DNA from: Bispira polyomma
Lineage: Eukaryota
Direction of reading: 5' to 3'
Length of the DNA: 64,000 nucleotides
Assembly: GCA_965649765.1 (NCBI GenBank)
Contig: OZ287758.1
Span: forward strand, 16,740,001 to 16,804,000
A program made the translations under genes and the position numbers. Every line of letters starts with the position of its first letter. Position 1 is the first letter of the stretch. Shown piece by piece: positions 6,801 through 62,800 of this stretch. The notes below the pieces were generated by a model. The model was not told the DNA's origin. It made no database searches and worked only from the letters and a program-made list of their open reading frames with translations.

Positions 6801-7371
6801 AACTTAAGTTTACATTATATTAAGGGTAAAGTGTCGAAGCATGTTACTGAACTGTCAAGTAAAACAATGTGCATAGCATATCAAGGTTTATTGGTAGCAC
6901 AGTTCCTCGGAGTAGTGCCTGAGGAAACTCAATTAACCGAACAAGTCATAGAAAGACAATACTGTGGTTAAATATATTTTATTTCATATTTACAGCTACT
7001 ATTACTAAGATATTTATGTACAGTTCTTTGACATGATATACACTTTGTGTGAGCATAAGGTCCCCATAACTCAACTGAGTTTAGGACTTTAGGTTAAACC
7101 AGAATAAGTTTAAGTAACCCTAACTAATAAAGAAGTTGAATTTAGAAAATTTGATTTAAGTTGAAACTTAAATATGACTTTGAAGATTAACAAATTAAAG
7201 TTTGACTTAGGGTTTAAGTGCAACTTTAATTACATGAGTACAATATGTACTTTAATAATACAGGGGGACCTTATGCCCACAGTTAATTCATTTAGTTTAC
7301 AGGTAATTAATATGCTACTTGCAATGTTAAACTGACTAGATGTTACAGTCATGCCACCAAACCCAAAAATT

Positions 7372-8357: not shown

Positions 8358-8380
8358 CTGGAAAACATGACTAACACGTG

Positions 8381-10810
8381 CTATATAAGTGAGTTAACTT
8401 TTAATAAACTGTGGCAAGCAGGCAGCCACTGGACAGGCCCAGCTAACCTAAATAACAACAAATGGTTGGCTTCAGTTTCAGTCCATCTTGACAGCAGATC
8501 TGCAATTTTATTTTCTTTACCCAAAATATGTATGACAACAATATCAATATTAAACTTGCTAGCTAACATGTATATATTCCTAGCATACGTGGCTAAGTCC
8601 GGATCTCTGGTGCGCCCTGTCTGTAAGACACTTACAACTGCCTGATTATCACATCTGACCAATATTCTACGACCTTTCCATTTATGAACCCACAATTTTA
8701 AAGCTACCAGGATGTTAAGCATCTCCAAAGAAGCAATATTGACCTCACTCATTTCTGGAGGAATGTTAATTTGGTACACTTGTTTCTCAAAAATACCCCC
8801 CATTCCAGTAAGGCAGGCATCTAATTCAATCTCACCAGTTATGGGCTTAGGCATGAAGAAAGAGACTCCATTGAACTGTTCTGCAAAAGTAGTAAACCAA
8901 TTTAAGTCACGCCTGAATTCAGGGTTGATGGTAATATACTTTCTGGTGTAATTATCTCTTAACAGTTCCAGCATCCTATTCAAAAAGACACGAGCATACT
9001 TTACACATTTAGAAATATACAATAACAAGCCAAGTAAAGACTGGAGCTCCCTCTTAGTGCAGAATTTTTTGGATTTCCATTCCTGACACTTTTATTTAAT
9101 TTCACTTAATTTCTCAACCGGGATGGAAGTAGTACCACGAATGGTATCCACCACTATGCCCAAGCAGACAACCTGCGTGCTGGGAGGAAGCAATTTTTTC
9201 TGACTTACTGTCAACCCCAATTCTTGTAGCAGTTCTTGCAATCTCAGGTAAGTTTTTTGAATCTTGCTGGGAACAGAAATCGCCAAGAAATCGTCGATAT
9301 AGTTGTGGACATTATGATTTACTGAGTGCATTATGAAACGCACGCCATCCGAAATTCTCTGAAAAATCGTGCTACCTTTACGATATCCGAACGGCAGAGA
9401 TCTGTCCACATAATAGGACTTCCACTTTAGACCTAGGAGGTCAACGTCGCCAGGGTCAATGGGTACGTGACGGAACGCCCTACTTATGTCGACCTTGAAT
9501 ATCTCGCATCCTCTACCCAATTTTACCACCTCACTAGTGAGATTATCAATAGATGGGTAAGACAGCAAAAATTCAACACCCAAGTAAGAGGAAGGAGATG
9601 CCCCCACATTAACCGACCCCCCTTGAGGCCAACTTAAGTCTACAATTACTCTCCGGTTAATTGAATTCGGTTTGTGTCTCGTCATAAGGGGAGAACAATG
9701 CAAGCCCGGAATGGGAGGTTTGTCAAATGGCCCCAACATGGCTCCTAACTCACATTCTTCTTGCATATAAGCTTCTACATGCTGTGGATATTCCTCAGCC
9801 GATTTATGGTTAATCTCACTGGATTCCAGTTTAACTGAATGATCCACGTCTAGGGGGAATCCATATTTTATGAGGAGAGGCAATTGCCAATCCCAGTAAT
9901 TTTTAAGGTATTTTTTCCAACTCTCTGGTCTTAACTGAGAGGGAACAGGGATTTGCAACCCTTCATAATTGTGTCTCCCATCAGCCCGAATTAAGTCATG
10001 CATTTCCAATATGGAAAGTTCGGGCCCTCCCCCACCATGATCTGCAATCTCACAGCCCAGAGCAGAGAGAGGAGTGAATCCATATGCATATTGACTTTGA
10101 GCTTGCCATTTTCTGTAAGTAGGATTTGAGGCAGCCTTAGCTAACATGCCTTTCTTATTTACTTTCTGTTTCAAAGCACAAGAGTATTTATCGGAACATT
10201 CGGAACTTCCCGGGCTGTCTTCGGAAGCAGTTTTACTCCTGGCCTTGCCTCGGTTAACGGGCTTGTCTCTAGTAACAGAAAGGAATCGAACGGGCTCGTC
10301 AACATTTTCACTGTCATCGACCGGCAACGACATTAGAGCGGTATACCTGTTAGCAAGAGGGAGGACAGCCACACCCCCATTGACCCGCCTCGCTTCGCCC
10401 CCATTCAATCTCGAACAACTGACCTCCTTTGTTATCCCCTTGTCTTGTTTCGCACACGTGTCAGGCTTCACAATGGGTGTCAATTGGCTCACAGAGGTAC
10501 CAAGGGGCCTCACCAAGGTGTCACTTTTGTTATGTACTATCTTCACCTTACTCTTGTCAAACCTTGCCTGTTTTACCTGTACATTATTAACACTTCTATT
10601 TACACACCCATACTTTTGAACTGGGCCATTCTTTTGCAACGCCTGGCTATAGCTCAAGCCTGGTCTGGTGCCCTTTACATATTTACACATTTTCTGACAC
10701 ACAGACCTCTCAAATAATTGTACATCCTTAAATTTAGTATTATAGACAAACCTACTTTTTTGCTCACCCCTTTTAGCCACTGCATCAACGCAGTGGCCCC
10801 TTAGTTTTTT
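8381..10810 (-). pseudogene. pol: Pol (RT + RNase H) with a single in-frame stop at 9092-9094
   Basis: ORFs 9092-10780 and 8381-9028 are in the same frame. RT motifs KVDISRAF and YIDD; RNase H motifs ELDAC, EMLN, CDNQ, ADLLSR. Confidence 0.93.
10776..10810 (-). promoter_or_regulatory. Predicted -1 ribosomal frameshift signal (A AAA AAC, 6-nt spacer, 8-bp hairpin)
   Basis: GCA AAA AAC TAA GGG GCCACTGC GTTGAT GCAGTGGC. The -1 frame reads KKLRGHCVDAVAKR into pol. Confidence 0.8.
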
Positions 10811-11871
10811 GCCCCTTTCTTATGACATTCATTAGTCTTGTGGCTACCCTCACATGTCTCACAATGATGTTTATATAACTGACCTCCAGTATTGTGAGAG
10901 CTGGGAAATCTACAATTTCCTTCCTGATAAAAGCGACAAAACATTGCACCTTTACGACTGCCAGATTTACTGCTACTAGAGTTACCTAGCCGTCCATTCG
11001 CCCCAGAGGAATTTCTACTGTTCGACACATGGCGCTGAGCATGGGCTCTTCGGATTCGATCCATCTTAGTTAGCTCTAGCCAACCTAACTTATCCATCTC
11101 CATACTTGTCAATACGACTGCATGGCAGGCCTTAGCTGACTCCCAAGAAAAATCCTGGGCATCCTCCATAAGACCCCCCATGTAATCCAGCATGGCATTC
11201 TTCACTTCGATCGACTTCTCCTCTTGGGCGATCCGAGCGAAACCACACACCCATTGCAACACGGTTAACTCATCGTAGCTAGGCCGAGACTTAGAACTAC
11301 CCGTCAGCACATAATTTTGAGGCCAGGCGGTGACCTTCTTTACCAATACCTCATTCGCCCCACTACGCTGGGACTTCAGTTTACCTTGCAAGGTGGTCTC
11401 ATTCAACGTTTTGAGATCTTTCAATATCTGCTCCACTTGGAGCTGTATTAGGGCATTCTGGTTTAAAAAATCTATGCCAGGAATTATACTGTCGGACGTA
11501 GCGATAGATGGGCTCTTACCTACGTCAGCAGAGCAACTAGCAGGCCTGACAACACTAGAACTAATCAAACTACTATTTGCCTGAACGGGGACCTGATGAC
11601 TTGCCTGACTACTGGTAAGGTTCGTCGCCAATGCTGCCTTATTCCTCTGAACCCGCTGGTCCATTTTCACCATTAATTCGTTCATCGAGTGCAGTTGAAG
11701 TAGTATAGCATTGGTAACTGCATCGCCGGACTCACCGTTTGCGGGTTCAGTGTCTGAGGCAGCATCGATCTCCTCCCCAGAGACAGAGTCAACAATTTTT
11801 GCAGTAACGTAATTTCGCCCGACAGGACGCTCATGTTTGGTTAAGCATTGACTACAATCAAAGACAGGCAT
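10801..11871 (-). CDS. gag: Gag-like protein (356 aa from the ATG at 11871)
   Basis: N-terminal CxxC..HERPVG motif, GKLKSQR, C-terminal Cys/His knuckles. Homologous to 40270-41265. Confidence 0.88.
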   Translation of the reverse strand: MPVFDCSQCLTKHERPVGRNYVTAKIVDSVSGEEIDAASDTEPANGESGDAVTNAILLQLHSMNELMVKMDQRVQRNKAALATNLTSSQASHQVPVQANSSLISSSVVRPASCSADVGKSPSIATSDSIIPGIDFLNQNALIQLQVEQILKDLKTLNETTLQGKLKSQRSGANEVLVKKVTAWPQNYVLTGSSKSRPSYDELTVLQWVCGFARIAQEEKSIEVKNAMLDYMGGLMEDAQDFSWESAKACHAVVLTSMEMDKLGWLELTKMDRIRRAHAQRHVSNSRNSSGANGRLGNSSSSKSGSRKGAMFCRFYQEGNCRFPSSHNTGGQLYKHHCETCEGSHKTNECHKKGAKN

Positions 11872-13130
11872 GACTAGATGGTGTTTCAACTAAAATATTG
11901 TAAATTATAAAAACGTAAACACCATAAACAAAATGTCACCCAAACAAATTTTAAACTAGTTGTTGCTCTGCTGACGAAACGATAAAGGCGGGAGAATTTG
12001 AAAAAGGAGAGCCTTATATAGTCGTACACCATCCCATAATAGTAGAACAGGCTGGTACCCCAGAACTGAGGCCACGAACGCTGAGGGCGTTCGCTTACAA
12101 ATCTAGCAGTGTAACATGGTGTCAATTGATATTGAATCTGAACAACAACAAAAACCAGTAGAGATTAGTGTTTGCCTTGTTTGTTACAAAAAATAATTGT
12201 TTTAATTTATACTAAATTATCTGGAACCCGACAATGATTCTGATAAAATGGATTCCCTTTAGATGTAAATTAAATGTAAGCTTCAGACTAACATTATGTC
12301 AACAGGCTGCTACTAAATTTCTTTAACATGCTGACCACGTAAAGGCAGAAAAAAGCTTGATGATTAACTTGTTAACACAGGCAAAACTCCAATTCAGAAA
12401 ATGCTAGGGGTTCTTTAGTTACCCCAGCTGGTCTAGTCAGTAGGTTGTAAATGTTACTATATGTCCTGATGTGTATGTGGGCATTCACTTTATACTGTTA
12501 TCCTGACATTTCCATCTGTCAATCTTATCATAAATGAAATCATCAAGCCTGGACATGGGTTCAAACTCTATAAAATTTCAAGACATATTTCAAGCCTTTC
12601 GGCATGTTGAAAATAACCTGGGGATATCTACATGATGGGACTTTCCGGGGAAACCAGTTCTATGGAGATACTTGTCCACAGTTTGGGTACAAACATGGTA
12701 GTACTCTTTACAGTTTAGGATCTATATTAGATACATAATACAAGACCTTGGCTTTTAAGTTATGAATTATATTGTTAATTATATATGGTTTGGCTGAGTC
12801 AGTACAGCTCAAAAATCCTATCAGCCCCTCTTGTAATAGCACTGACATGGGTAAATCTACAAAACTGTCCATTTGACAGGTTAGTTTTCTTTTGTCTGTA
12901 TGTCCAACCTTTCCACCCATGTGGTCTCACTGTTTGATCCTCCCAGGCATTTGTGCGAAGCGGATACATGTTTAGGCCTCCCATTTATATTGAGAGGCCA
13001 TCGACACTGTGGGCGCCATCAGGTTGACACATGGATCGTCTGATGCCCCCCGCCCCTCTTTCGAGTCAGGGTGAGGAAGCATAGGCTCTCCTTACTGACA
13101 GTAAAATCAGGTGTCTCGAGCATAGTGCTA

Positions 13131-16200: not shown

Positions 16201-19200
16201 AAGATATTTCATTTTTATTCGAAAATATGTCTATTGGTAAACAAATAGCTTCTAACAGTAGTTTTATAATAGTAATTTTCCAAATCCCCCATTTGAGATT
16301 CTGTTGTACTGCAAGTCAAGTGCAGTTCAAATGGTGTGCTGTGATGTATTACTGTGATGTATTACTGTAACACACATGCAGGCTCTTCTAACCAGGGCAC
16401 AAGAAACAGTTAAGAAATCAATCTGGGGAGAACCTTTTTCCAAAAGAAGGGATTTGTGTGACAAATTCATCTTCTGGAAGATAAGATATTTTATAATGTA
16501 CCCAGGGCCAACTAGTGTCCTTTTTTCTGTATTTCTCATGCAGGTGTCATAATTTTTAGGTTTTGACAGAAACCCTGTCACAGAAGAGATCTCTTCATGC
16601 AGATTAATGTAGTGTGTGGCATTTAACTCTGCCACAAAAGCTGACAAAAACATGAGAAAGATATTAAAGTAATCTCACCAAATTGTCTTGTAGGCGTACA
16701 GTTCAGTGATTTTATCACAAATAACTATTTGTAGTGAAGCTTATTTCAAATGATTTGTGTCACATCAGCACTGCTGATAAAATCAAATACATCCAGATGC
16801 TATATCAGGCAATGTGACAAAGTTTTGATGTTACATCATCATCTGCTTAGAGCTCTGGCTATACTTTCTACAAATATGTTTTTGATCATCGGCTCTGTTA
16901 TGTATATAAGGAAGTTGGCAGTGCACTTACAGAAAGCCAGAGATTTGCAGAGCAGACCAACTTAACCAAATTGTCTGTACCAATATCCTTTACCAGAAAA
17001 CAGCCTGCCGTGATACGACACAAAACTTGTTAAAGCGACATTGTGTTTTTAATCCCAAACTAAATCAATATTTTAATGTAATATCAATTAATAAATATAT
17101 GGCACACTACACTAGAAAAAAATGGCATGTTCCATAGATTTCCACTTTTTGTGGGAAGTTTACATATGTTGGCAAATACCCTTTTGACATACTCCCAAAA
17201 TATGTAGTGTTGCAAACCACCACATATATAATGTTAACACTACTAAAATATGTATGAATGATACTGTGAAAGAACTGGCAAGGTATTGTGTAGTCTGGTT
17301 TTAAAAAGCTGCTGCAAAATAACTGCTGCTTAACCAATATAGAACTCACACTTTTACTGGCTATTTTAGTGTTCATAACTATATCTCCTTTCAGAGTCAT
17401 AACTCAGTGGCTGATTTCATTTATATGAAGTATTTATGCAGTGCTTAATTAATACTTCATCCTCCAAAGCATTTGTTCTCCGAGAAAAGATAGTCCTACA
17501 ACATAGCAATGGTTGTCATCAGTAGGTAATGGTATGTTTAATCTTGCCCAAGGATGTTATCCCCTGTAACCATTATGATATTACTAGGAGTCGGAGCAGG
17601 GACCTTCTGATCATCAAACCAATTACCTTACCACTTGGCCATTGGAAACCACAATTGTCAACACTGATAACGTTGCACATTCAAAGTGAGGTTTGTGAAC
17701 CAGAGTCAAGATGGATGTGTCTGAGATAGGCAAGTTGACTTTGGTGTAAGGGATGTATCACCCCCTTGTCTCAGATCTAAGAACTAGACTATAGTCTCAA
17801 TTGGGGTAAAATTGATGACTATGTGGCAGTCAACAGGATGATGAAATACTGGGCTTTAGCTATTTTTGTTAGTTTATACATTAGTCTATTCCAATTTGTT
17901 CAGCAAATTCATGCTTATCCAAAAAAACCTTTCTTTTGATGAAATGAAGTAATTTAATATGGGAAGCTACCTTTTTTCAACCACTATTGTGTAATTAATA
18001 AACATATTGCAGTAAATAAAATGTACATATCTCTATGTTGAAGGATTGTGACAAATTATACAAATGTATCTTAAAACTCTTATATTACATCACTGATGTT
18101 TAAATCATGCTCATAAACTATTACATTTATTTTCTACAAAATCATAGTTTGTATAATGTTTTTAAATGTCATTGAATTATATTTGCACACAAGGTAGTCC
18201 AGCACATTGAACTTAAAGTACCAGAGCTCAAAAACAACTGACACAATATCCAGTGACAAGAAGATGTAATATACACTACAGTCTTTATCAGAAGAAGAAA
18301 GGCTGGCGATAAACAGGCTGGTTATCAATCAAATCTAGTGTCACAGTGAATCATGTGATCTCAGTGTGTTGATTAATGGCATGCTAGTTTCTGTAGGTCT
18401 ACTCCAACCACTCCATTTATTTACTGTTAATAAACAGCTCAGGGCTGGTATTCACAAAGATTCTTTGTCTTAAACTTTTGTCTCCAGCTATTTAGTTTGC
18501 TAAAAATATTATTGTTTGTTTATTATGTGTTTCAAGGTGTAAATATCTGAAAAACCATATCTGAAATATCTGAATAACTAATGCATATTTCAAAGCTTGA
18601 CTTAAAATTGACAAGATGTATTGATTTGAATTGAAGCAATCAACCTTTTTTGGAACCTAGTCCAGATATAACTGGGTTAGGAAACCTCTGCACAAGGACC
18701 TGTACGATATGGTAATCTCCCAGGACAGTCTTCAACCCTATTAAAATTTGAACAAAGAAATACCAAACATGGAAGCTGTCTCTTTTTATGGCTTAAACAT
18801 ATCAATTTACAGTCTCTACACTTTGTATATTTGTTATAGTGCGGGAAAATGAGGCAGGTTTAAGCATGTGGTAGTAAGTTGTATTAATAAAAGTTTTGTC
18901 TGATTTCCCTTTTAAAATCTTAAATTATGTTGTGATTCCTAAAGTTTTCAGAGCAGAGAGTCAGTTGTAATTGTAACTTTCAAAAAGGGAACACAAATTT
19001 ATATCATAAAGAACAATAAAGGGAATAAGATATATGATAGATATACATTGTATATCTATATATAACTGTTGGGGTATAATTTAAGTAGATTTTTGACTTT
19101 CTTAACTGTACTCCAATGTAGAACACTGATTTAGACCCTAATTTATACATAATTTGCACTAAGAAATTATTATAAGAAAAAAACAGAAGAACCGGTAGGA

Positions 19201-37200: not shown

Positions 37201-40095
37201 TTAATTAGAAGGCAGAGGCAATTACTAATCATACCAAAGGGAGTTTCATATGGTTCCAGAATCAAGACTAAATGTTCTTGTTTTGAAGACAGTTGTAGGA
37301 GACCTTATTGTGAATGGAAATAGTGGGGTAATAATCAAAGATAATCATTAACAGTGTGAGTAATATATCACTTACACGCTCTCCCTCCAAACATCAAAGT
37401 ATTGATGAGAAGAGGTAAAGAAAAGATGACACTGCAACAGATACTAACTTGTGTGTAGTTGTAGACTTAATGAGAGTGGGGAAACTACATCTACCCCCTC
37501 ATACCATCTTAATAAAATTTATTGGACTGAATTAATAGCTAATTATTGCTTTAAAGTGAATCTCAATAGAATTGAGAGTGAGACTGGCAGATGTGGGGTG
37601 TTTTATCACTGGGCAGGATCTTACAGGTTAAGAAGGAGTTGTGTGTTCTTGACTATGTTGTTACCTCTGATGGGATATGATGCCTGTATACTGTATGTCA
37701 AGAAATATTACAGAGTGTTTGCAGTTTCAGAAAGATATTTTATTTTTATTCAAAAATATGTCTGTTGGCGAAGAAATAGTTTCTAGCAGTAATTTTTTAC
37801 AGTAATTTTGCAAATCCCCCATTTGATATTTTGTTTTACTGCAAATAAAGTGCAGTTCAAATGGTGTGCTGTGATGTATTACTGTGACCAGGGCAAAAGA
37901 AATAGTTAAGAAATCAATCTAGTGGAGAACGTTTTTTAAAAGTAGGGATTTGTGTAAAAATACATCTTCTAGAAGATAAGATATTTTATAATGTACCCAG
38001 GGCCAGCTAGTGTCTTTTTTTCTGTATTTCTCACATGCATGTGTCATAATTTTCAGGTTTTGACAGAAACCCTGTCACAGAAGAGATCTCTTCATGCAGA
38101 TTAATGTACTGTGTGGCATTTAACTGTGCTACAAAAGCTGACAAAAACATCAGAAAGATATTAAAGTAATCTCACCAAATTGTCTTGTAGGCGTACAGTA
38201 CAGTGATTCTATCACAAATAACTATTTGTAGTGAAGCTTATTTCAAATTATTTGTGCACAAGAAATGGCAAGGTATTGTGTGGTTTGGTTTTTAAAAAAC
38301 TGCTGTAAAATAACTACTGGTTAACTAATATAGAACTCACACTTTTACTGGCTATTTTAATGTTCATAACCACATCTCCTTTTAGAGTCACAACTCTATT
38401 TTAAGCATTTATGCAGTGCTTAATTAATACTTCATCCTTCAAAGCATTTGTTCTCCGAGAAAAGATTGTATTACAACATAGCAATGGTTGTCATCAGTAG
38501 GTAATGGTATGTTTACATCTTGCCCAAGGATGTTTTCCTCTGTAACCATTATGATGTTACTAGGAGTCGGAGCAGGGACCTTCTGATCAACAAACCAATT
38601 ACCTTACGACTTGGCCATTGGAGACCACAAATTGTCTACACTGATAACGTTGCACATTTAAAGTGAGGTTTGTGAACCAGAGTCAAGGTGGACGTGTCTG
38701 AGATAGGCAAGTTAACTTTAGTGTAAGAGATGTAGCACTCCCTTGTCTCAGATCTAACAACTAGACTATAGTCTCAATTGAGGTACAATTGATGACCATG
38801 TGGCAGCCAACAGGATGATGAAATACTGGGCCATTTTGGTTAGTTTATACATTAGTCTATTTCAATTTGTTCAGTGAATGTTTATCAAAAAACCCTTCTT
38901 TTCATGAAATGAAGTAATTTGATATGGGAAGCAACCACTATTAGGGAATTAATAAACATATTGCAGTAAATAAAACATACATATCTCTATGTTGCAGGAT
39001 TGTCACAAACTATATAAATGTATCTTAAAACTCTTATTTTACATCACTGATGTTTAAATCATGCTCATAAACTATTACATTTATTTTCTACAAAATCATA
39101 GTTTGTATAATGTTTTTAAATGTCACTGAAATATATTTGCACACAAGGTAACCCAGCACATTGAACTTAAAGTAGCGAAGCTGAAAAACAACAGACACAA
39201 TATTCAGTGACAAGAAGATGTAATATACACTACAGTCTTCATCAGAAAAAGAAAGGCTGGCGATAAACGATGTGGTTATCCATCAAATCTAGTGTCACAG
39301 TGAATCATGCGTTCTGAGTGTGTTGATTAATGGCATGCTAGTTTCTGCAGGTCTACTCCAACCACTCCATTTATCTACTGTTAATAAACAGCTCAGGGCT
39401 GGTATTCACAAAGATTCTTTGTCTTAAACTTTTGTCTCCAGCAATTTAATTTGCTAAAAATATTTTTGTTTGTTTATTATGTGTTTCAAAATGCAAATAT
39501 CTGAAAAACCATATCTGAAATAGCTGAATAACTAATGTATATTTCAAAGCTTCACTTAAAATTGACAAGATGTATTGATTTGAATTGAAGCAATCAACCT
39601 TTTTTGGAACCTAGTGCAGATATAACAGGGTTAGGAAACCTCTGCACAAGGACCTGTGTGATATGGTAATCTCCCAGGACAGTCTTCAACCCTATTAAAA
39701 TTTAAACAAAGAAATACCAAACATGGAAGATGTCTCTTTTTATGGCTTAAACATAGCAATTTACAGTCTCTACAGTTTGTATTTTTGTCATAGTGCGGAA
39801 AAATGAGGCAGGTTTAAGCCTGTGGTAGTAAGTTGTGATAATAAAAGTTTTGCCTGATCTCACCTTTAAAATCTTAAATTATGTTGTGATTGCTAAAGTT
39901 TTCAGAGCAGAGAGTCAGTTTTATTTGTAACTTTCAAAAAGTGAATACAAATTTATATAATAAAGAACAATAAAGGGAATAGGATATATGATAGATATAC
40001 ATTGTATATCTATGTATAACTGTTGGTGTATAATTTTGGTGGGCTGACGCCCTTGCGACAGCCCCCCTCAGTTCTGGTGGCAGGTCACTGGGGGG

Positions 40096-40162
40096 CCAAT
40101 TAGGCCACCTGGGGTCACGGGGGCAAGTATAAAAGGGATTGCCGCCAACAGGCGCCATCATT
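40096..40162 (+). promoter_or_regulatory. Putative internal Pol II promoter of the YR element
   Basis: CCAAT at 40096-40100, TATAAAA at 40128-40134, Inr-like TCATT at 40158-40162. The other element has TATATAA at the matching position (12014-12020, minus). Confidence 0.6.
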
Positions 40163-40269
40163 AGTTAAAAACAGTTCATAGATACAAGTGTTTTTACAAT
40201 TGGGGCTTTTACTACCCAGGGCTTTTACTACCTAGATATTGTTTTACATTTTTAATTGAATGTGTAGTC

Positions 40270-41265
40270 ATGCCTAAAGAATACCCGTGTAGTGTATGTT
40301 CTGGTCGGCACGAACGTCCAGTTGGGAAGAAATGTAAATTTAATCCGTTGGACAGCGTCGCTGATGAGGTGGCTGCCGTTGATCCTGCTGTGCCTGCTGT
40401 TTCTGATTCCGTATCTAGTTTGATACTTCAACAACTGGTCGTGATGAATGAAAAGATGGACAGCATGGATCAACGAGTACAAGCTACTGAGGCGGCGCTG
40501 TGTAAACCCAGCGCACAGGCATGTAACACAGTTTTTAAATCTGTATCTAATGTCCCTAGTGTTAGTGAACCAGTGGTTGAGGCCGTTGTGCCCTCCCTAG
40601 ATTACCTGCGTTCAAATTCCGGCTTACAGAGTCAGGTAGACCAGCGCTTGCTGCAACTGCAACAACTCAATGATTTAACGGGAGGTAAACTGAAATCCCA
40701 AAGAGGTGGCGCGGAAGCTCCCGTTAAACGTCATGTTGATTGGCCACAAAATTTTGTCTTATCTGGTGTAAAAAAGGTTAGACCCACTTATGATGACCTT
40801 ACTTTGGTCCAGTTCGTCTCCGGGTTTGTTCGCTGTACGCAAGAGCAAAAAGAGTCCTCTGTCCGCGAGGCCATGTTGGAATATCTGGCATGTCTGATGG
40901 ATGACGCCCATGATTTTTCGTGGGACGCCGCCAAAGCCGCTCACGCCATTTTGTTAACCAACATGGAAATGGACCGATTGAATTGGACGGATGTCGAAAA
41001 GGTCGACCGGGTAAGGCGCGCTCATGCACAGCGTCATGTAACGTCCTCAGCTAGTGGGTCTGGCCTTTCTAAAAGCAATGTTGGCAGTAGGGGTAAAACC
41101 TCGGTGAAAACAGCTGGAGTAAATTGTCGGTTCTTCCAAGAAGGAACGTGCAAATTTGATGCCAGCCATCGCACTTCTGGACAGTGGTTCAAACACTGCT
41201 GTGAGCGCTGTGATGGCACGCATCAAACCAAGTTGTGCTCCAAAAAGTCGGTGTCAAAAAACTAA
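40270..41265 (+). CDS. gag: Gag-like protein (331 aa)
   Basis: CSVCSGRHERPVGKKC N-terminal motif, coiled-coil-like segment, GKLKSQR, and C-terminal CRFFQEGTC..H / HCCERCDGTH..C. Confidence 0.9.
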   Translation: MPKEYPCSVCSGRHERPVGKKCKFNPLDSVADEVAAVDPAVPAVSDSVSSLILQQLVVMNEKMDSMDQRVQATEAALCKPSAQACNTVFKSVSNVPSVSEPVVEAVVPSLDYLRSNSGLQSQVDQRLLQLQQLNDLTGGKLKSQRGGAEAPVKRHVDWPQNFVLSGVKKVRPTYDDLTLVQFVSGFVRCTQEQKESSVREAMLEYLACLMDDAHDFSWDAAKAAHAILLTNMEMDRLNWTDVEKVDRVRRAHAQRHVTSSASGSGLSKSNVGSRGKTSVKTAGVNCRFFQEGTCKFDASHRTSGQWFKHCCERCDGTHQTKLCSKKSVSKN

Positions 41266-41290
41266 GGGGCCACTGCAGTATTGCAGTGGC
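41256..41290 (+). promoter_or_regulatory. Predicted -1 ribosomal frameshift signal
   Basis: TCA AAA AAC TAA GGG GCCACTGCA GTAT TGCAGTGGC: heptamer at 41256-41262 and a perfect 9-bp stem at 41269-41290. Confidence 0.82.
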
Positions 41291-43796
41291 TGCTAAGAAA
41301 CTTGTACATAAAACCTGCTCTAGAGTTGTATATAATTCTACTTTTAGGGATTTTAAACTGTTTGATCATGTGTGTTGTAAATATAATGTGTGTGCTGGAC
41401 CCCGAGTTAACAGGTCATACCGGGACGTGTTGAAACAGGGCCTTGTGGTTACTGATACCAAGATTTGTGGAAACCGGGAAATGGGAAAAGTTAACACTGT
41501 TTCTGTTAATAAAACTCCCCAAGGTAGCAAACTCGTGTTCCATAATTCATCATTGCACAAGGTGTCGGGAAGAAAGCATTCACCCGTGAAGGTGTTAAAT
41601 ACATCAGCTGACAGGCGACGTGAGAAAACAAATCACCAAAAGGTGTTAAGAAAAACACCTTTGGGTGGTGTGAAAACATCCTTGAATAGGCGGGTCAGTA
41701 ACAATGCAAACCGTGTGTTACAAAACAAACCAATTGTGTCCAAAACAATTGAACTAAGTGATGGCGAAGGGTGCCCTAAACTTCTGGTTTCTCCGAGTGT
41801 GAAAACAATTGGCGCGGGTACCACTCCAAGTAATGCTAACAATAGTGGGTTTCGCCTTCCCATTCATAACCGGTTTAGTTGTTTAGACATTCCTGGTGTA
41901 GAACTTCCTGACTCGAGTGACACGTCAGGTAAGGTCGATTTCACACCTAATCCACCACCTAACAAGAGATCTAACCCGTGTGATGACAAGTATGTCCTGG
42001 ACCTCTCAGGAGGCCTTGATAAAAGACAGCGCTTAAATGCAGCTAAAGATAATGTGACCTATAAGTTGTGGGATATACAGTATAGTGGAAAGTATGGGTT
42101 CATACCCACTAGTTCCTGGGGTACCCCAGTGATTGATTGTTCCAATAACCAATTGATCACAGACGTGTTTACACTACATAAGTCCCTTAAATTGGATGGG
42201 AGACCAAATTATAAGGGTTTACAAGTCCCCATACACACCCAACTGACGGTCCCTGCCTGGGAAAAGTACTTAGCGAATTATTGGGATTGGGAACTCCCCT
42301 TACTGATAAAATTCGGATTTCCTCTTGACTGTAATGAAGAACACGAGTTCAAGTCTGACTTGAACAATCATGCTTCAGCCAATCAATATCCTGAACATGT
42401 GAACCATTACCTGAAAGAAGAATGTTCTATGGGTGCTATGTATGGACCTTTCGTCCATCCCCCAATTGATGATGTGCACACATCCTCCTTTATGACTAGA
42501 GACAAATCAAGCTCGGTTAACCGACGAGTCATAATCGATCTGAGTTGGCCCATCGGTCATTCGGTTAATGCAGCCGTGTCATCGAGTTCGTATCTGGACA
42601 AGGAATTTGTACTTACTTACCCTTCCATAGATGACATAACCCAACAAGTGTTGCAAAACGGTAGGGGCTCCTTGCTATTTAAAGCGGACATTAGTCGCGC
42701 ATTCCGTCACGTGACCATAGACCCCAGAGACATCAATCGCCTGGGCTTATACTGGGACGGCTACTATGTCGACGGCTCGTTGCCCTTTGGCTACCGACAC
42801 TGTTCAGTGATTTTTCAGAGAATTTCTGACGGTATAAGGTATATAATGGAAGGTGAAGGTCATCAAATCACCAACTATATAGACGATCTGTTATGTTCTT
42901 CTGTTCCCTCAAAAATCTATAAAACGTACCACCGACTGCAGGCCCTTTTGGCCGAGTTGGGTTTGACTCTCAGTAAAAAGAAGCTGGTTCCTCCAGCCAC
43001 CCGGGTAACCTGCCTAGGCATAGTTATAGATACAGTTCGGTTCACTACATCGATACCAGAGGACAAACTAGCTCAGGTTCAAAAAATATGTGGCAATTGG
43101 AGTGATAAAAAGCAGTGTACTAAGCGGGAGCTCCAATGTTTATTGGGTTCTTTGCTATATATTTCTAAATGCGTGAAGTACTCACGATTTTTTCTGAATC
43201 GGATGTTGCAACTCCTCCGAAGCAATCACCACAAAAGAAGTATGAAAATTAACCCTGAGTTCAAAAAGGACCTTAACTGGTTCATTGAGTTTCTCCATAA
43301 ATACAATGGGGTGACATTTTTTCATCATGCCCCCATTACTGACATTGTAGAGTTGGATGCCTGCCTAACAGGCATGGGAGGAGTGTATGACAAACAAGTA
43401 TATTACCTTCCCATTCCTGCTGCTATGCAGAAACATAATATTGCTTCATTGGAGATGCTTAACATTCATGTGGCTTTGAAATTGTGGGGCAAATACTGGC
43501 AAGGACGTAGACTGTTAATTAAATGTGATAACCAGGCTGTTGTAAGTGTCCTTACTCATGGTAGAACTAGAGATAGCGAATTAGCCCTGTACTCGCGGAA
43601 CATATTCATGCTGGCTAGCCAGCTCGATGTAGAGATACAGGTGGTTCATATTCTAGGAAATGACAATACCACTGCTGACCTCTTGTCTCGCTGGACAAAT
43701 TCAATTAAGGATAAGGTTCTCTTACAGGAGCTGGTGGGCAATGTCCAATGGTGTGCCGTGACAGAGGACCACTTACTGCTTAATCACCACATTTAG
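41256..43796 (+). CDS. pol: Pol (RT + RNase H), probably translated as Gag-Pol by -1 frameshift
   Basis: Open frame 41235-43796 with KADISRAF, SLPFG, YIDD, ELDAC, EMLN, CDNQ and ADLLSR. No downstream methyltransferase domain. Confidence 0.95.
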   Translation, partial: KKLRGHCSIAVAAKKLVHKTCSRVVYNSTFRDFKLFDHVCCKYNVCAGPRVNRSYRDVLKQGLVVTDTKICGNREMGKVNTVSVNKTPQGSKLVFHNSSLHKVSGRKHSPVKVLNTSADRRREKTNHQKVLRKTPLGGVKTSLNRRVSNNANRVLQNKPIVSKTIELSDGEGCPKLLVSPSVKTIGAGTTPSNANNSGFRLPIHNRFSCLDIPGVELPDSSDTSGKVDFTPNPPPNKRSNPCDDKYVLDLSGGLDKRQRLNAAKDNVTYKLWDIQYSGKYGFIPTSSWGTPVIDCSNNQLITDVFTLHKSLKLDGRPNYKGLQVPIHTQLTVPAWEKYLANYWDWELPLLIKFGFPLDCNEEHEFKSDLNNHASANQYPEHVNHYLKEECSMGAMYGPFVHPPIDDVHTSSFMTRDKSSSVNRRVIIDLSWPIGHSVNAAVSSSSYLDKEFVLTYPSIDDITQQVLQNGRGSLLFKADISRAFRHVTIDPRDINRLGLYWDGYYVDGSLPFGYRHCSVIFQRISDGIRYIMEGEGHQITNYIDDLLCSSVPSKIYKTYHRLQALLAELGLTLSKKKLVPPATRVTCLGIVIDTVRFTTSIPEDKLAQVQKICGNWSDKKQCTKRELQCLLGSLLYISKCVKYSRFFLNRMLQLLRSNHHKRSMKINPEFKKDLNWFIEFLHKYNGVTFFHHAPITDIVELDACLTGMGGVYDKQVYYLPIPAAMQKHNIASLEMLNIHVALKLWGKYWQGRRLLIKCDNQAVVSVLTHGRTRDSELALYSRNIFMLASQLDVEIQVVHILGNDNTTADLLSRWTNSIKDKVLLQELVGNVQWCAVTEDHLLLNHHI

Positions 43797-43878
43797 ATAT
43801 TGCTTTGTCTGGTTGCATGGTATTATGTTGATCAACCTTTACAAATGTTACTTTGTCTGCTCTGTGTTTGTGTTATAG

Positions 43879-44867
43879 CTAGAACTCCCCTGCAGCAGTT
43901 ATTATATCTAAATGCAACGAAGAAGCTTCACCTGACCTTCTGCAGGTCTACAGACAGATCTTATACTGCGATGTATAGGGTGTACCAAGCTTATGCATCC
44001 TTCTCGGATCTGCCTTGTGACCAGGTGACAGCTATTGATCTTCTTGCTTTTTTAGAATTGTTACACTTTAACTCTGTAAAACCTGCCCATATGGCCAATT
44101 ATTTATCTGCTATTAAAGCTAAGAGTATTGTATACAATGTGCCCATTCTTGCCTTCAGTGACCCTCGCTTGGCTTACTATCAAAAGTCTGTCCAATTAGC
44201 TGCCCCCTTAAATGTTCAGCTCAAAAAGATTATAGACATACCTCTTCTGACTAGTATTGTCAATGTCTCCAACACCACTTACATGGGTCCTATCTTTACA
44301 GCTGTGTATTTGGTCAGCTACTTTTCCTTCCTGAGGTTATCCAACTTAGTACCTCATTCCTGTCTTCAGTTTTCTGCTTTAAGACATCTATCAAGGGCTG
44401 ATGTTATGTTTCACAGGGACAAAGCTGTCCTTTTGGTAAAATGGTCCAAAACAATGCAGATTAATAATCAGATTAGACTTATTACTATCCCACGTTTGGT
44501 GGGTTCCCCTCTTTGCCCTGTGGGGTCACTGCAGGCTATTATGGCTCTTACTCCGTCTGAACCTAATTCACCCTTATTTCAATTGAGAGACAAATCTCAC
44601 TGGGTTCCGCTTACTGACACCCGTGTCCGCAGGCATTTCAAAACGATACTTGCCAGGCTCCAGTTGCAGGATTCTGGCCTCACACTGCACGCTTTCCGAC
44701 GTTCGGGTGCCACTTTTGCCTTTAACCATAACGTCAGCATTCAGAACATCCAAAAACATGGCACTTGGACGTCGGATTGCGTGTGGAGGTATGTTACCGA
44801 CTCAGTGGATGCGGGCCAGCAGGTATCGGACACATTTCGCCATCATCTTGCTACTTCTTCTTCCTAG
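43879..44867 (+). CDS. Tyrosine recombinase; probable second exon
   Basis: FLRLSN, KWSKT, HAFRRSG, HGTW, WRY. Homology to the other YR starts at ARTPLQ, directly after TGTTTGTGTTATAG. Confidence 0.93.
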
Positions 44868-47800
44868 CTTCCTACTTGCTGGGTTTGGGTGTTTCTACTC
44901 AAAATTTAGTCTATATTTTCATATTCTAGATAATTATGTAACTTTTGCATTACATGTAGTCACATGCTAGTCATGTATAGTGTCATATAGAATTTAAATT
45001 ACTATTTCACTTGCTAGTCATTTCATGTTACAACTATAAAGTTAACTTCACAGAGTAGTATTTTATTTCCTAGTAATTGTATGCTACAACTAGTAATTCA
45101 ACTTCATGAAATAACTGTTTCATTAAAAGGTAATAGAATCTGTAATTAACTGCAAAATTACAACTTAACTCTTCTTCTATACAATTTAAGGTCACCTCAA
45201 TTTCTTTAATTCCCCTATGGGTTAAAATTTTAGTATACTAACCTGTATTTAAGGTGATCTTTAGCCCCCTTTTGTAGTCTAAATTATAAGATCATCTCCA
45301 TTTATAAGTCCCCTACGGGCTTTGTAATTTCACTTATTTAACTGTGTTGGGGTGACCTTATCTTGTTCTTTGAAGTTATGTAAAATATTATTATTACTTT
45401 CACTCAATTTAGTATGACTTAAAGTTACAAATTATCATGACCTTAAGTCACGTTGTATATAGTAGTTTAACATAGACTAACAATAAAATATTTTACCGCA
45501 TTCTGCTTACTTACTATCTTGCCTTCTTGACCTCTGACCCTTTGGCCTGTCACGCGGGGGAATGAAGTAGATTTTGACTTTCTTAACTATACTCAAAAGT
45601 TGAACACTGATTTAGACCCTAATTTCTACATAATTTATCATAATTATAAATTATTATAAGAAAAAACAGAAGAACTGGTAGGAGCAAAGAGTGTGAGAAA
45701 CCATCAAGTCCATGTGTCACTTTAAATCATGGCTTTGTCAGGACTGTTTTGATTTATGATGTGGCTAATTCTTCAGGTCCCTCTAACTACTCCATTTATT
45801 TTACTATTTATAAACAGCTCAGATGTCGGCTGTGATCATTTCTTTTGTTTAATGAGTGGCAATGCTGGAGTGAAGTGCTCTCTAAATCTGTCAAAATGTC
45901 CATATAATCTCAGCTGGCACCTCTTCTTACATCCACCAGTCTTTTAATTTAACACGGCTTAAGAACCTTCTGATTGAGTGGCTTTTTACCAGTGTGAATT
46001 AGTATTTTTTTTCCTCCTGATGTAAAAAAATGAATAGATCCAGTGAGACTTCACTTGGTTTTTTTTTTGTTATTTGTTTAGCAACCCCACTTTCCCCAAA
46101 GAAAACACTTAATGGTGGGTAAATGGTTAGACATTTGAGGAAAGTACATTGGGAGTATTAAAAGTTAATGACAAGGAGGTTCAATAGTTACTTGTTTGAG
46201 GTGCAAACATGTTTATCAGCTGTAAATGTTTAGAAGTGCCGTGAATGCATATGGGTTGAGTTTTTAGTTTTATTGTTTCTTCAAATGATAGACACTGGGT
46301 TTTCTACATATCAAAATACTAAAAAAGCATGAAATTAATTGTAAAGACAAACTGTGGGGCTTTTGTGTCATTTCTGCCCCTGCGTTGTACAAAGTGTTCT
46401 ACTATTTCCAAGTGTAAGACCTAGAAAATGTAATAAATACAAATGTCCTCTCTACATGACTATGCGCAACTCTATAGCATCACTTCTGATTGGTTTTTGT
46501 CACAATCTCATCACTCCACTGCTGACACATCTACAGTTAGTGGCATCAGCCCATTGCTCAAAATGAAAAAAATGCAGTGATTGCAAGTTTCACATTTCTG
46601 TAGCTTTTTGTACAATGTGTAAATATATTGACAGCTGGTAAAAAGTTTAACCAGTAATTAATTAATTAGTCACGCCACACAGCTTTAAAACAGTTATTTC
46701 AAGAACAGACTTGTTTCCGACAACAAATTTGTCAATTATTGATTGTTCACATAGCTTATGTAGCATTACCATTGAGAAAGACAGTATTTCTGTCTATTTT
46801 CTGAAAATTTTCTGTGAATATTAAAGATATTCAGAGAAATAAAGAAAACAACACCAACATTCGACAACCAAAGAGCCACTACTAGATGTCTTCAAAAATA
46901 TTAATTTACCAACAAGTTATTTTGCACTCTAGATAAGATCTAATTAGATGACTGTCAATTAGCAGTCTGGTCATTTTAGCTGGTCATCCAAGTCAAGCAG
47001 CATGTATTAAACACTAAAAACATGCACAACTTTAACACTGATGACAATCACCTGTTCCTGTGTAAAAATTGTGCATGTAATTAAAATGGACCTAGGTTTG
47101 CATATGCCTTTTATACTTCCAATTATCATTGTATATATTTAATTATGTAGAATGCAAAGAGTAAAAAGTGGAGAAGGGTTAAGCAGAAACCAGGGGGCTT
47201 AATCTATCCTTAGCCTTGCCTAAAGCTAAATTCATATTTTAGCTTACTTACAAAATTTCAAATATGTACACATTAAATAAACTCGTACAACTACACTCCA
47301 GAAAGGGCATTGGAATAAGGTACATTCAGATACATTTTCTTTTGTTAGTTCTACTTCCACTTCTTGATTCATCATTAATAAAACTTGATTTTGTAATAGG
47401 ACACCACTGCACAAGAGAAACACCTTATACCATGATGTACATCTCTTGTTTCATACCAATGTAATAACATATCCTGACATCAGACTTTGCGTTTTAGTTA
47501 TTACTGTGTGATTAGTAATAACTCTGCTTTAACTCTTGGTTTACTGAACCAGCATCTTAGCTATTAAATATTTTAAAATACCCCAAAATTTAATACATTA
47601 ATCAACAAAACATGATAGCATGAGTCAAACTTTACACCTTAATTGTTCACAATATTGATCAAAGTCAAAGTTTAGACCTTTGTGACATCACTCAAGTTAA
47701 ATAACTGCAGCGGTCTTGTTCAGAGTCTCCACAATGTTGACAAATGGAGAATTTGCGCTGTCACAGGTGAAATATACTGATACACTTAGTGGCTGATCTA

Positions 47801-59800: not shown

Positions 59801-62800
59801 GGAATTAAATCATGAAAAGGAGCATAAATTTTTATTATTCTAGCATGACATGGCTGTGTCCGCGATTCTGATTTGGCAAAAGCTTTATTAAAAATAACCG
59901 TATACCCATAGACGGAAATAGACTAATATCATCAGTAATGCAATAATGCAGGAAAAACGCTGGAATCAGGTAATAATTTTAATTTGTCATTTTACAATAG
60001 TAAAAACCCATTCCAAAGCATGGTATACTGTAATTTTTACCACTCTTGGAACGTAGGAACACTCAGACTTTGCTTTCATGTTACTACGCCTCCAATCGTG
60101 GTAAAAAGTACTGTATACCATGCTTTGTCATGGTTTTTTCCTAAATTATACTGAGAAAATGTGCTTATTTATACTGGTGTTATATATATGTCATGATAGA
60201 CAAATTTTCCAAAAAATGCAATCAGATCTTAGGTAATGTGACAAGGTTAACTTAAAACTGAAAAAGCAGCCAGTATCTTAGATTTATATTATATCTGGGA
60301 AATTTGCCAGTCTATAGTATTGTATTATATATTTTTAATGCGCTTTATTGATGTGTGGCATCTTGTAAAGCCCAACAACCAAATCAATTAACCAATCATG
60401 TGTCCTACAACATTGCCTATGTGATAATCAGTATGCAATGGCATGTTCACATCTTGCCCACAGATGTTATATCACCAATAAACCCAGTGACATTAGCAGT
60501 AGTTAAATTGGCAACCCTTCGATCACCACACCAACTCCCTCACTAAGAGTTTCACCATTCTAATATTTGACCAACTTCCTAACCACTAAGCAACGAGAGA
60601 CAACAAAATTCCATTGAAAACTTTCAAAAAATAGAATGGGATATATGATATACATTGTACATATAACTATGAATATGTATAACTGTTAATGTATAATTTA
60701 AGTAGGTGTTTGACTTTCTTAGTTGTACTCCAAAAAGAACACTAATGTAGACCCTAACCTATACATACTTTGCATTTAAGAAGTTCTTATAAGAAAAAAC
60801 AGAAGAACCGCAAGGTAGGAGCAAAGAGTGTGACAATTGATCAAGTCCATGTCTCACTTTAAATCATGGTTTTGTCAGGGCTGTTTATGATTTTGATGTG
60901 GCTGACTCTTTAGGTCACCCTAACTACTCCAGTTAGTTTACTATTTATAAACTGCTGTAATAATTTCTTTTGTTGAATGAGTAGCCGTGTTAGTGAAGAG
61001 TGAAGAACTCTCTATATCTGTCAGAATGTCGATGCAGTCTCAGCAGACACTTCTTCCCACATTCACCAGTCTTTTTTGGTTTAACATGGCTTAATTAAGA
61101 ACCATCTGATGGAGTGGCTTTTTACCAGTGTGAAGTTGGGTTTTTTCTCTGGATGGTAAAAAATAAATAGATTCACTCAGACTTTACTTGGGGTTTTTCT
61201 TATTTGTTTAGCAACCCCACTTTACTAAAATAGAACTCTTACTGGTGGGTAAATGGTCCGATGTTTTAGGACAATACATTGGGAGTAATAAAAGTTAATG
61301 ACAAGCAGCTTCAATAGTTTGAGGTGCTGTAGATATTTAGAAGTGCAGTGAATTCACATGTTTTGAGTGGTTAGCCTTATTATTTCTTCAACTGATGGAA
61401 AAATGGTGAACAACATATTATAGACCATACAATAGGTTTTCTATATAAGAAAATGCAAGTAAAGCATTCCATATCACAATGGGAACTGCGGCATGCCACC
61501 AAAGATTGTTGAGAAAATGAAATGAATTGTAAACATAAACTGAAAAGCTTTTTTTGTCATTTCTGCCCCTGTATTGTATAAAGTCTTGTAGTATTTCCAA
61601 GTATAAGATCCAGAGAATGTAATAGATACAGATGTCCTCTCTACATGACTATGTGGAACTCTATGGCATCACTTCTGATTGGTTTTTGTCATAATCTCAT
61701 CACTCAACTGCTAACACATCAACAGTTAGTGGCATTAGCCCATTGCTCAAAATGAGCATGGTTGGACAAAAAAGGCAGGGATTGCAAGTTTCACATTTCA
61801 GTAGCTTTTTGAACAATGTGTAAATATATTTACAGACAGTAAAATGTTCAACCTGTAATTAATTAATTGGTCATGCCATACAGCCTCGAAACAGTTGTTT
61901 TCAAGAATAGACCTGTTTTCAACATTAATACAATTATGCTTCCAATTTTTTGAAAAAGCTATCAGAAATCCAGTATTTATGTAACAAATGTGCAACTGAC
62001 TGATTATTCACATAGTTTATGTAGCATTACTACTGAGGAAGGCAGTATTTCTGTATATCTTCTGTATATGTCTGTATTTATCTTCAGTGCAGAGGAATAA
62101 AGAAAATAACACCAACATTTGACAGCCAATGAGCGACTTCCAGATGTCTTCAAAATGATAATTTACCAACATCTCAAAGTTCTTTAGCACTCTAAATAAG
62201 ATCCAATCAGATGACTGTCAATTACCAGTCTGGTCATTTTAGCTGGTCACCCGAGTCAAGCAGCATGTATTTTACATGCCCAATTTTAACATTGATGACA
62301 ATCATCTTTTCCTGTGTAAAAATTGTGCCTGCAAAAGAGCCTAGATTTAGATATGCCTTTTATGCTTCCATAAGTAATCAGCCCTGTCTATATTTAATTG
62401 TGTAGAATGCAAAGAGTAGACAGTGGAGAAGGTTAAACAGAAACCAGGGGAATTTAATCCATCCTTAGCCTTGCCTAAAGCTAAATTCATAGCCTAGCTT
62501 ACTTTACACAATTTTAGAATATGTACATATTCACATTGTAGGTGAAGATACTTGGCAGTATATTATTGCTCTGGAAGGGGCATTAGGAAAATATGGCCAC
62601 ATTATGCTATTCAATCATACATTCACATACATTTTCTTTCATATACTCTTTACAGTGATTTTGTTATTTCACCTTCCACTTCTTGATTCATCCTTAATGG
62701 AACGTGACTTTGTGATAGGTCACCACTGCACATAAGAAACATCTTATACCATGAATTGGATCTCTTGTTTCACACCAATGTAATAACCTTTCCTGGCCTC

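What the first reader, a model, noticed from the sequence alone, without database searches (positions are those of the whole stretch)
40037..45564. Intact, recently inserted YR retrotransposon with no ITRs, ICR or split direct repeats
Seen: boundaries proven by two empty paralogs, with zero target bases gained or lost and all ORFs open. No copy of either terminus was found elsewhere in the element by eye. The TATA box is ~90 nt inside the 5' end and AATAAA (45482) is ~80 nt inside the 3' end, with similar spacing in the 6900-12099 element. A transcript from the integrated copy would therefore lack both termini. Established: DIRS1 rebuilds its ends using ITR/ICR, and PAT/Ngaro use A/B repeats. 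Inference: either a repeat-less lineage that needs YR excision and transcription across the circle junction (predicted GGGGAATG|TGGTGGGC), or dead-end resolution products.
Basis: partly seen in the sequence, partly recalled or inferred. Interest (0 to 1): 0.8.

Follow-up and report, generated by a model that had tools for sequence, protein, structure and literature searches.

The report
Ngaro retrotransposon copy lacking tail repeats
This is an intact-looking copy of an ordinary Ngaro-type tyrosine-recombinase jumping gene that lacks the tail repeats other copies of its family carry, so it is a known kind of element in a cut-down form and not a new repeat-less lineage.

Summary
Window 40037-45564 is a 5,528-bp insertion with exact boundaries against two empty paralogs, no target duplication or loss, three open ORFs (gag, RT/RNase H, tyrosine recombinase) and no internal copy of either end.

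The "repeat-less lineage" reading does not hold. Elsewhere in this genome the same family has the classic split direct repeats, A1-ORFs-B1-A2-X-B2, where X is a 487-bp unique spacer. It occurs at 28 or more loci.

Short and long copies are interspersed on the family tree. Mini A-X-B elements and a B-A-X-B-A-X-B array also exist. The second element in the window (6900-12099) is likewise a short form of its own split-repeat family, and relatives in another species show the same layout.

The window copy is therefore a short-form derivative that lacks the template for rebuilding its ends. Either it lost A2-X-B2 by B1 x B2 recombination after insertion (favoured), or it was integrated from a one-junction circle. 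These data cannot separate the two. Read evidence could not be obtained.

An earlier follow-up in this scan reached the same conclusion on other DNA of this genome.

The parts
40037..45564 (+). Whole short-form element (A-INT-B), 5,528 bp
   Evidence: Exact boundaries against the empty paralogs. 23 near-full copies in the genome share the termini TGGTGGGC...GGGG(A)AATG.
40037..40199 (+). A repeat (163 bp). It holds the 5' terminal hairpin, a conserved CTCAGTTCTGG box and TATAAAA at 40128-40134.
   Evidence: In long copies this segment recurs directly after B1 as A2. The hairpin and box are conserved, with compensatory changes, in four families.
40270..41265 (+). gag-like ORF, 331 aa, with a Cys/His motif near its C-terminus
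   Evidence: It is 44% identical to the gag of the second window element. No Pfam hit.
41235..43796 (+). pol ORF, 853 aa (reverse transcriptase plus RNase H), in the -1 frame relative to gag
   Evidence: Pfam RVT_1 E=1.9e-07 and RVT_3 E=1.5e-04. 187 unnamed relatives at up to 57% identity. No methyltransferase domain was found.
43800..44867 (+). Tyrosine recombinase ORF, 355 aa, in the same frame as pol after a single TAG
   Evidence: Weak Pfam Phage_integrase hit. Atlas neighbours are eukaryotic phage-integrase-family clusters scoring 0.98-0.99. HxxR and W..S.....Y motifs can be read in the translation.
44886..45564 (+). B repeat (679 bp, the whole 3' UTR) with AATAAA at 45482-45487
   Evidence: In long copies it recurs after X as B2. 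B1 and B2 differ at 0-6 sites within a copy.
19076..19089 (+). Empty paralogous target site 1 (junction 19082|19083)
60693..60706 (+). Empty paralogous target site 2 (junction 60699|60700)
6900..12099 (-). Second YR retrotransposon, from a different family (44-52% aa identity) and also a short form. Its pol frame is broken.
   Evidence: In the genome, 10-11 of 26 copies of this family are followed by its A (1-153), about 735 bp of spacer, and its B (4737-5200).

Best explanation
The element is a short-form copy (A-INT-B) of a Ngaro-type tyrosine-recombinase retrotransposon. The complete form of this family is A1(163)-INT(4686)-B1(679)-A2(163)-X(487)-B2(679). In the complete form, the internal B1|A2 junction carries the roughly 180 nt that a transcript running from the A promoter to the B poly(A) site lacks. 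It therefore plays the role that the ICR plays in DIRS-1, as the template from which the ends are rebuilt before the recombinase inserts the element without a target duplication.

The window copy has no such junction. It can still encode gag, RT/RNase H and YR, but it cannot regenerate its own termini, so it is a dead end in cis and possibly a protein donor in trans.

Most likely it was inserted as a long copy and lost A2-X-B2 by homologous recombination or single-strand annealing between B1 and B2. These are two 679-bp direct repeats only 650 bp apart, and recombination between them leaves exactly A-INT-B with both original ends and an untouched target.

Shown: the anatomy, the family architecture, the junction, the identity of the repeats within a copy, and the polyphyly of short forms. 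Inferred: the transcript ends, the role of the junction, and the deletion route.
For: Family architecture:
- Long copies L002, L007, L008, L014, L019 and L020 have A2-X-B2 directly after B1.
- The B1|A2 junction is present at 28 or more loci at 96% identity or better.
- X is unique, non-coding and conserved at 95-100% among long copies.

Repeats and relationships:
- B1/B2 and A1/A2 share copy-specific variants and differ at only 0-6 of 678 sites and 0-2 of 163 sites. The repeats were therefore identical at insertion, as LTRs are.
- Short and long copies are interspersed on the tree.

The same pattern elsewhere:
- A second family in the window shows it.
- Relatives in another species show it, with 100%-identical repeats.

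Support for the deletion route:
- Short forms (16 of 23, plus 11 in the sister burst) far outnumber mini A-X-B forms (2 of about 30 X loci). This is expected if recombination rate follows repeat length and proximity: B is 679 bp with copies 650 bp apart, A is 163 bp with copies 5.4 kb apart.
- A B-A-X-B-A-X-B array, the reciprocal product of unequal exchange, exists in L033.
- The tight young burst is 15-16 long to 11 short, while the older set is 6 long to 16-17 not long (Fisher p=0.02-0.04).

Precedents:
- Solo AB repeats occur in Cafeteria Ngaros (PMC8547959).
- Xenopus Ngaro copies lose their split repeats (PMC9210276).
- Only 7 of 15 VIPER copies have split repeats, and SIRE equals A2 + unique + B2 (PMC6681497).
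- The DIRS-1 ICR is experimentally essential (PMC7192593).
Against: - Within the closest 23 copies, short copies are not older than long ones. Private substitutions are 6-38 in short copies against 17-42 in long copies (Mann-Whitney p=0.06-0.11).
- All 6 copies with three open ORFs are short.
- 11 short copies are 99-100% identical to a long copy of the sister burst. Deletion would therefore have to be fast, about 500 times the per-site substitution rate.
- No transcript, circle or read evidence could be obtained.
- Copies of the sister burst were typed from match coordinates only, because no more genome sequence could be fetched.
- The full homogenisation of B1 and B2 is not explained by a simple transcript that runs from A1 to the AATAAA of B2.
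Confidence: 0.5

Rival explanations
1. Born short. Reverse transcription of a read-through RNA from a long master often yields a circle with one B|A junction, [A-INT-B], the analogue of a retroviral 1-LTR circle. The recombinase inserts that circle at the junction. The short form would then be a primary, frequent and cis-dead product of each round, and only a minority of progeny would regain A2-X-B2.
For: - Short copies are at least as young as long ones and include all six fully open copies.
- 11 short copies sit inside a burst at 99-100% identity.
- Short copies have exact termini and the same A/T-first 3' flank as long ones.
- The same 55-70% short fraction is seen in two unrelated families.
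- No permuted A-X-B-A-INT-B copy occurs among 49 full copies. Long copies therefore have a fixed order, and circles are not shuffled freely.
Against: - If short circles arose by reciprocal resolution of a two-junction circle, mini A-X-B insertions should be about as common, but only 2 of about 30 X loci are minis.
- The long fraction is higher in the younger burst, which fits decay over time.
- No circle or junction-spanning read was examined.
Confidence: 0.33
2. One reading: short copies are a self-sustaining repeat-less lineage. The recombinase excises them as circles, transcription runs across the new B|A junction, and that RNA carries full-length information.
For: - Insertion leaves no target change, so precise excision is chemically possible.
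- A few all-short pairs occur on the tree, namely L005/L006, L010/L015 and L009/L012.
- Short copies keep open ORFs.
Against: - Short copies are polyphyletic, and each main clade also contains long copies or a copy with a truncated A2 (L013).
- The junction needed is already supplied in cis by long copies at 28 or more loci.
- The conserved A1-B1-A2-X-B2 layout, with identical repeats, in four families and two species argues that this layout is the replicating form.
Confidence: 0.06
3. Assembly artefact: the tail A2-X-B2 exists at this locus, but the assembler collapsed the two B repeats.
For: B1 and B2 are near-identical 679-bp repeats, a classic collapse substrate. Reads could not be checked.
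Against: - The same assembly resolves 28 or more long copies, and even a three-B array with identical units.
- The short:long ratios are similar in two families with different repeat lengths.
- The assembly is highly contiguous: 75 contigs for 1.04 Gb.
Confidence: 0.04

Closest known systems
Ngaro superfamily of tyrosine-recombinase retrotransposons (A1-[ORFs]-B1A2B2; Goodwin and Poulter 2004, as summarised in PMC8547959, PMC4157794 and PMC9210276)
   Same: The gag, RT/RNase H and YR order; no methyltransferase domain; internal repeats downstream of YR; A1=A2 and B1=B2 within a copy; no target-site duplication.
   Different: A family-specific unique spacer X lies between A2 and B2. It is 487 bp here, about 735 bp in the second window family, and 1,157 and 1,187 bp in relatives from another species. 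The window copy itself lacks A2-X-B2. Placement on a tree with named Ngaro references was not done.
VIPER and its derivative SIRE in Trypanosoma cruzi (PMC6681497)
   Same: The same three forms occur: coding copies with split repeats (7 of 15), coding copies and a database consensus without the 3' repeats, and a small A2 + unique + B2 element (SIRE). These correspond to the long, short and mini (A-X-B) forms here.
   Different: VIPER is confined to kinetoplastids and its unique piece is about 30 bp. Here X is 487 bp and minis are rare, not abundant.
DIRS-1 of Dictyostelium (ITRs plus internal complementary region; PMC7192593)
   Same: The logic is the same: the transcript lacks the ends, an internal copy of the circle junction supplies them, and YR inserts the element without a duplication. 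Deleting the ICR abolishes retrotransposition, which is the basis for calling the short form cis-dead.
   Different: There are no inverted terminal repeats, no complementary ICR and no methyltransferase. The junction copy is in direct orientation (B1|A2).
Solo LTRs and 1-LTR circles of LTR retroelements; solo AB repeats of Cafeteria Ngaros (PMC8547959)
   Same: The derivatives arise by recombination between the element's own direct repeats. The repeats are identical at insertion and can be used for dating.
   Different: Here the common derivative keeps all coding sequence and loses only the tail, because the B repeats flank the short A2-X segment and not the genes.

Membership tests
Ngaro-like YR retrotransposons | Encodes gag-like, RT/RNase H and tyrosine recombinase proteins, with YR last | tested here: met
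   ORFs. Pfam RVT_1, RVT_3 and a weak Phage_integrase hit. Atlas neighbours.
Ngaro-like YR retrotransposons | No methyltransferase domain after RNase H | tested here: met
   No such Pfam hit at E<=0.01. RNase H ends about 30 residues before the pol stop, and the YR ORF starts 4 nt later.
Ngaro-like YR retrotransposons | Split direct repeats A1-[ORFs]-B1-A2-B2, with the internal repeats downstream of YR | tested here: met
   Met for the family: 6 of the 23 closest copies, 15 or more of the sister burst, and 28 or more junction loci, with an extra spacer X. Not met by the window copy itself.
Ngaro-like YR retrotransposons | Insertion without target-site duplication | tested here: met
   Two empty paralogs.
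Ngaro-like YR retrotransposons | RT and YR group with named Ngaro references in a phylogeny | not tested
   No named reference sequences were available from the tools. All 187 protein relatives are unnamed.
DIRS1-like | Inverted terminal repeats plus an internal complementary region matching both ends | tested here: not met
   No inverted match of either terminus above shuffled controls.
DIRS1-like / PAT-like | Methyltransferase domain in pol | tested here: not met
Crypton (YR DNA transposon) | YR only, no reverse transcriptase | tested here: not met
   RT and RNase H are present.

The most novel reading that the evidence does not exclude
Short A-INT-B copies are not decay products. They would be either the main primary product of each replication round (one-junction circles inserted by the recombinase) or, more radically, still mobile through recombinase excision and transcription across the re-formed junction. 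Most coding-competent Ngaro copies in a genome would then be made without the structure needed to copy themselves.
Probability: 0.35. Interest if true: 0.45.

Novelty: new member of a known kind. Interest (0 to 1): 0.22.

Why it matters
The biological weight is modest. The result prevents a false claim of a new retrotransposon architecture. It also shows a practical trap: single-copy inspection, or a consensus built from the commoner short copies, hides the split direct repeats and leads to misclassification. The same has happened for VIPER and a Xenopus Ngaro consensus (PMC6681497, PMC9210276).

The genome offers a clean data set for asking how split-repeat elements rebuild their ends and how often they fail. 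It has two families, each with dozens of young long, short, mini and array forms, exact empty sites and repeats identical at insertion. It also shows that a sizeable unique spacer between A2 and B2 is a conserved part of the layout in this group.

Tried and rejected
- Hidden ICR, ITRs or internal copies of the termini in the window copy: none above shuffled controls.
- X as a diverged copy of internal sequence or as a coding region: no similarity to the element beyond chance, and stops in all six frames.
- Diagnostic B1-versus-B2 differences that could type the B of short copies as B1, B2 or chimeric: none exist, because the repeats are homogenised within each copy.
- Age test of short against long copies by private substitutions: inconclusive.
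- An exact-pattern search for the junction undercounts, because the G-run length varies.
- The original Ngaro paper (10.1093/molbev/msh072) is not held.
Full report
**What is in the window**

Window 40037-45564 (+) is a GC-richer block, 43-46% against about 35% around it. It carries three open frames:
- a 331-aa gag-like ORF (40270-41265);
- an 853-aa pol in the -1 frame (41235-43796), with Pfam RVT_1 and RVT_3;
- a 355-aa tyrosine recombinase (43800-44867), with a weak Phage_integrase hit.

The Atlas neighbours of the recombinase are eukaryotic phage-integrase-family clusters from Basidiomycota, Chordata and Mollusca. No methyltransferase domain is present.

The window also holds a roughly 20-kb segmental repeat in three copies. 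The element sits in only one of them. The flanks align to 18783-19082 | 19083-19381 and to 60699 | 60700 with no base gained, lost or ambiguous.

TATAAAA is at element position 92, and AATAAA ends 77 nt before the 3' end. Neither terminus recurs inside this copy in either orientation. The best local scores are at or below those of shuffled controls.

**What the family looks like**

A search of the window's own genome (1.04 Gb, 75 contigs) found 23 near-full-length copies at 94-100% identity. All share the termini TGGTGGGC...GGGG(A)AATG.

- Six of the 23 (L002, L007, L008, L014, L019, L020) continue directly after the last base with element bases 1-163, then 487 bp of unrelated sequence, then element bases 4850-5528.
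- The complete element is thus A1(163)-INT(4686)-B1(679)-A2(163)-X(487)-B2(679).
- X has no similarity to the rest of the element, has stops in all frames, and is 95-100% conserved among long copies.
- A 323-bp probe across the boundary finds 28 full-length matches at 96% or better. An exact-pattern search undercounts because the G-run length varies.

A sister subfamily is marked by an 85-bp duplication in X (X'). It contributes 15-16 long copies and 11 short copies at 99-100% identity. The short ones were recognised because their match stops exactly at the end of B. These copies were typed by coordinates only, since no more genome sequence could be fetched.

Other forms also exist:
- mini elements A-X-B with nothing else (L031, L032);
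- an array INT-B-A-X'-B-A-X'-B (L033);
- one copy with B followed by only the first 65 nt of A2 (L013).

No permuted A-X-B-A-INT-B copy was seen among 49 full copies of the two families.

**Generality**

The second element in the window (6900-12099, minus strand) is 44-52% identical in protein to the first, and its pol frame is broken. It is also a short form. In the genome, 10-11 of 26 copies of its family are followed by its own A (1-153), about 735 bp of spacer, and its own B (4737-5200).

Two relatives from a different assembly (ENA ERZ22147071; pol 46% and 56% identical) have 100%-identical A1/A2 (165 and 163 bp) and B1/B2 (374 and 401 bp), with spacers of 1,157 and 1,187 bp.

Across these four families the junction is conserved. 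It has G(A/G)GGAA(C)TG|TG(G/T), then a hairpin whose stem differs in sequence but keeps pairing, then C(T)TCAGTTCTG(G). This fits a conserved recombination site.

**Properties of the repeats**

Within each long copy, B1 and B2 differ at 0-6 of about 678 sites and A1 and A2 at 0-2 of 163. Copies differ from each other by up to about 5%. Every one of the 68 informative B columns shows the copy-specific state in both B1 and B2. The repeats are therefore identical at insertion, like LTRs. The B1-B2 divergence of 0.6-0.9% dates the six long copies.

This also means there are no B1-specific or B2-specific markers with which to type the B of short copies. How both Bs become identical over their whole length is not explained by a simple A1-to-B2 transcript. 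I leave that open.

**What the window copy is**

On a maximum-likelihood tree of the 23 copies, short and long forms are interspersed. The window copy groups with one long and one short copy. Short copies are therefore produced repeatedly from lineages that have the tail. They are not a separate repeat-less lineage.

By analogy with DIRS-1, where deleting the internal junction copy abolishes retrotransposition (PMC7192593), a copy without B1|A2 cannot rebuild the roughly 180 nt missing from its transcript. I read the window copy as coding-competent but dead in cis. This step is inferred and not shown.

**How the short form arises**

Two routes give exactly A-INT-B with intact ends and an untouched target.

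(a) Recombination or single-strand annealing after insertion, between B1 and B2, which are 679-bp repeats 650 bp apart.
- For: short forms greatly outnumber minis, which would need the 163-bp A repeats 5.4 kb apart to recombine.
- For: an expanded array exists, as expected from unequal exchange.
- For: the young burst has a higher long fraction than the older set, 15-16:11 against 6:16-17 (Fisher p=0.02-0.04).
- Both fractions fit one loss rate of about 500 times the per-site substitution rate. That rate is my own estimate, and I regard it as plausible for close direct repeats on general knowledge.

(b) Insertion of a one-junction circle, the analogue of a 1-LTR circle.
- For: within the closest set, short copies are not older. 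Private substitutions are 6-38 against 17-42 (p=0.06-0.11).
- For: all six copies with three open ORFs are short.
- For: short copies occur inside a burst at 99-100% identity.
- Against: if such circles came from reciprocal resolution, minis should be as common as short forms, and they are not.

I put (a) at about 0.5 and (b) at about 0.33. Self-propagation of short copies gets about 0.06 and assembly collapse about 0.04. That the element is a short form of a split-repeat Ngaro-type family I hold at more than 0.9.

**Comparison with what is known**

Ngaro elements are defined by A1-[ORFs]-B1A2B2, the absence of a methyltransferase, and YR-mediated insertion (PMC8547959, PMC4157794, PMC9210276). 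The family meets every structural criterion tested. Phylogenetic placement with named references was not possible.

Copies and consensus sequences lacking the 3' repeats are documented for Xenopus Ngaros (PMC9210276) and for VIPER, where 7 of 15 copies have the repeats. The small SIRE element equals A2 + a 30-bp unique piece + B2 (PMC6681497). That is the same trio of forms found here. Solo AB repeats are reported in Cafeteria (PMC8547959).

The only feature I did not find described is the size and conservation of the spacer X (0.5-1.2 kb).

An earlier follow-up in this scan, on other DNA of this genome (s1-632729), reached the same verdict. I reached mine before reading it.

**Limits**

No read-level evidence could be obtained. 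The transcript ends, read-through of the B1 poly(A) site, circles and possible repeat collapse at this locus are therefore untested. Copies were only aligned, counted and dated.

Noticed in passing
window 41256-41290: The gag stop is preceded by the slippery heptamer A_AAA_AAC in the gag frame. About 5 nt further on lies a perfect 9-bp stem-loop (GCCACTGCA...TGCAGTGGC). Pol is in the -1 frame. This looks like a classic -1 frameshift signal.
   Followed up: no
window 43794-43880: The YR ORF is in the same frame as pol, separated by one TAG. A long pyrimidine tract ending in AG at about 43878 precedes the conserved part of YR. YR might be expressed by readthrough or splicing.
   Followed up: no
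L002:7189-7675, and X' in L031/L033: The A2-B2 spacer X is a unique non-coding segment kept in every long copy. A sister subfamily carries an 85-bp internal duplication (X'). The first ~300 nt of X still match at 72-81% in more distant families of this genome. Simple folding gave no structure signal.
   Followed up: partly
L031, L032 (mini A-X-B); L033 (array): Mini elements of about 1.3-1.4 kb consist only of A, X and B, with exact element ends. One locus has three identical B units separated by two A-X' units.
   Followed up: partly
26 insertion sites in L001-L033: The first flanking base after the 3' end is A or T in 26 of 26 insertions (chance about 6e-06 at 63% AT). The last base before the 5' end is mixed. 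No microhomology between the junction and the target was seen at the window site.
   Followed up: partly
window 40040-40090; window 12050-12096 (-); L034:10005-10060; L035:9946-10000: A hairpin a few bases inside the 5' end keeps its pairing through different stem sequences in four families. It is followed by a conserved CTCAGTTCTGG box.
   Followed up: partly
L005: This copy is inserted inside the pol region of a related YR family that is 67-77% identical, in the same orientation. This recalls the preference of DIRS-1 for inserting into its own kind.
   Followed up: no
L013, L024, L025: These copies have one exact end and one truncated end: B followed by only 65 nt of A2, a 3' truncation inside YR, and a 5' truncation inside pol. 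They could be later deletions or insertions of incomplete linear cDNA.
   Followed up: no
window 15700-64000: A segmental repeat of about 20 kb is present in three tandem copies at 80-97% identity. It provided the two empty sites.
   Followed up: partly
window 24-1484; 13207-13344; 22023-22427: Further retroelement remnants are present: a distant RT (29% identical to pol) and two YR fragments (37-39% identical).
   Followed up: no
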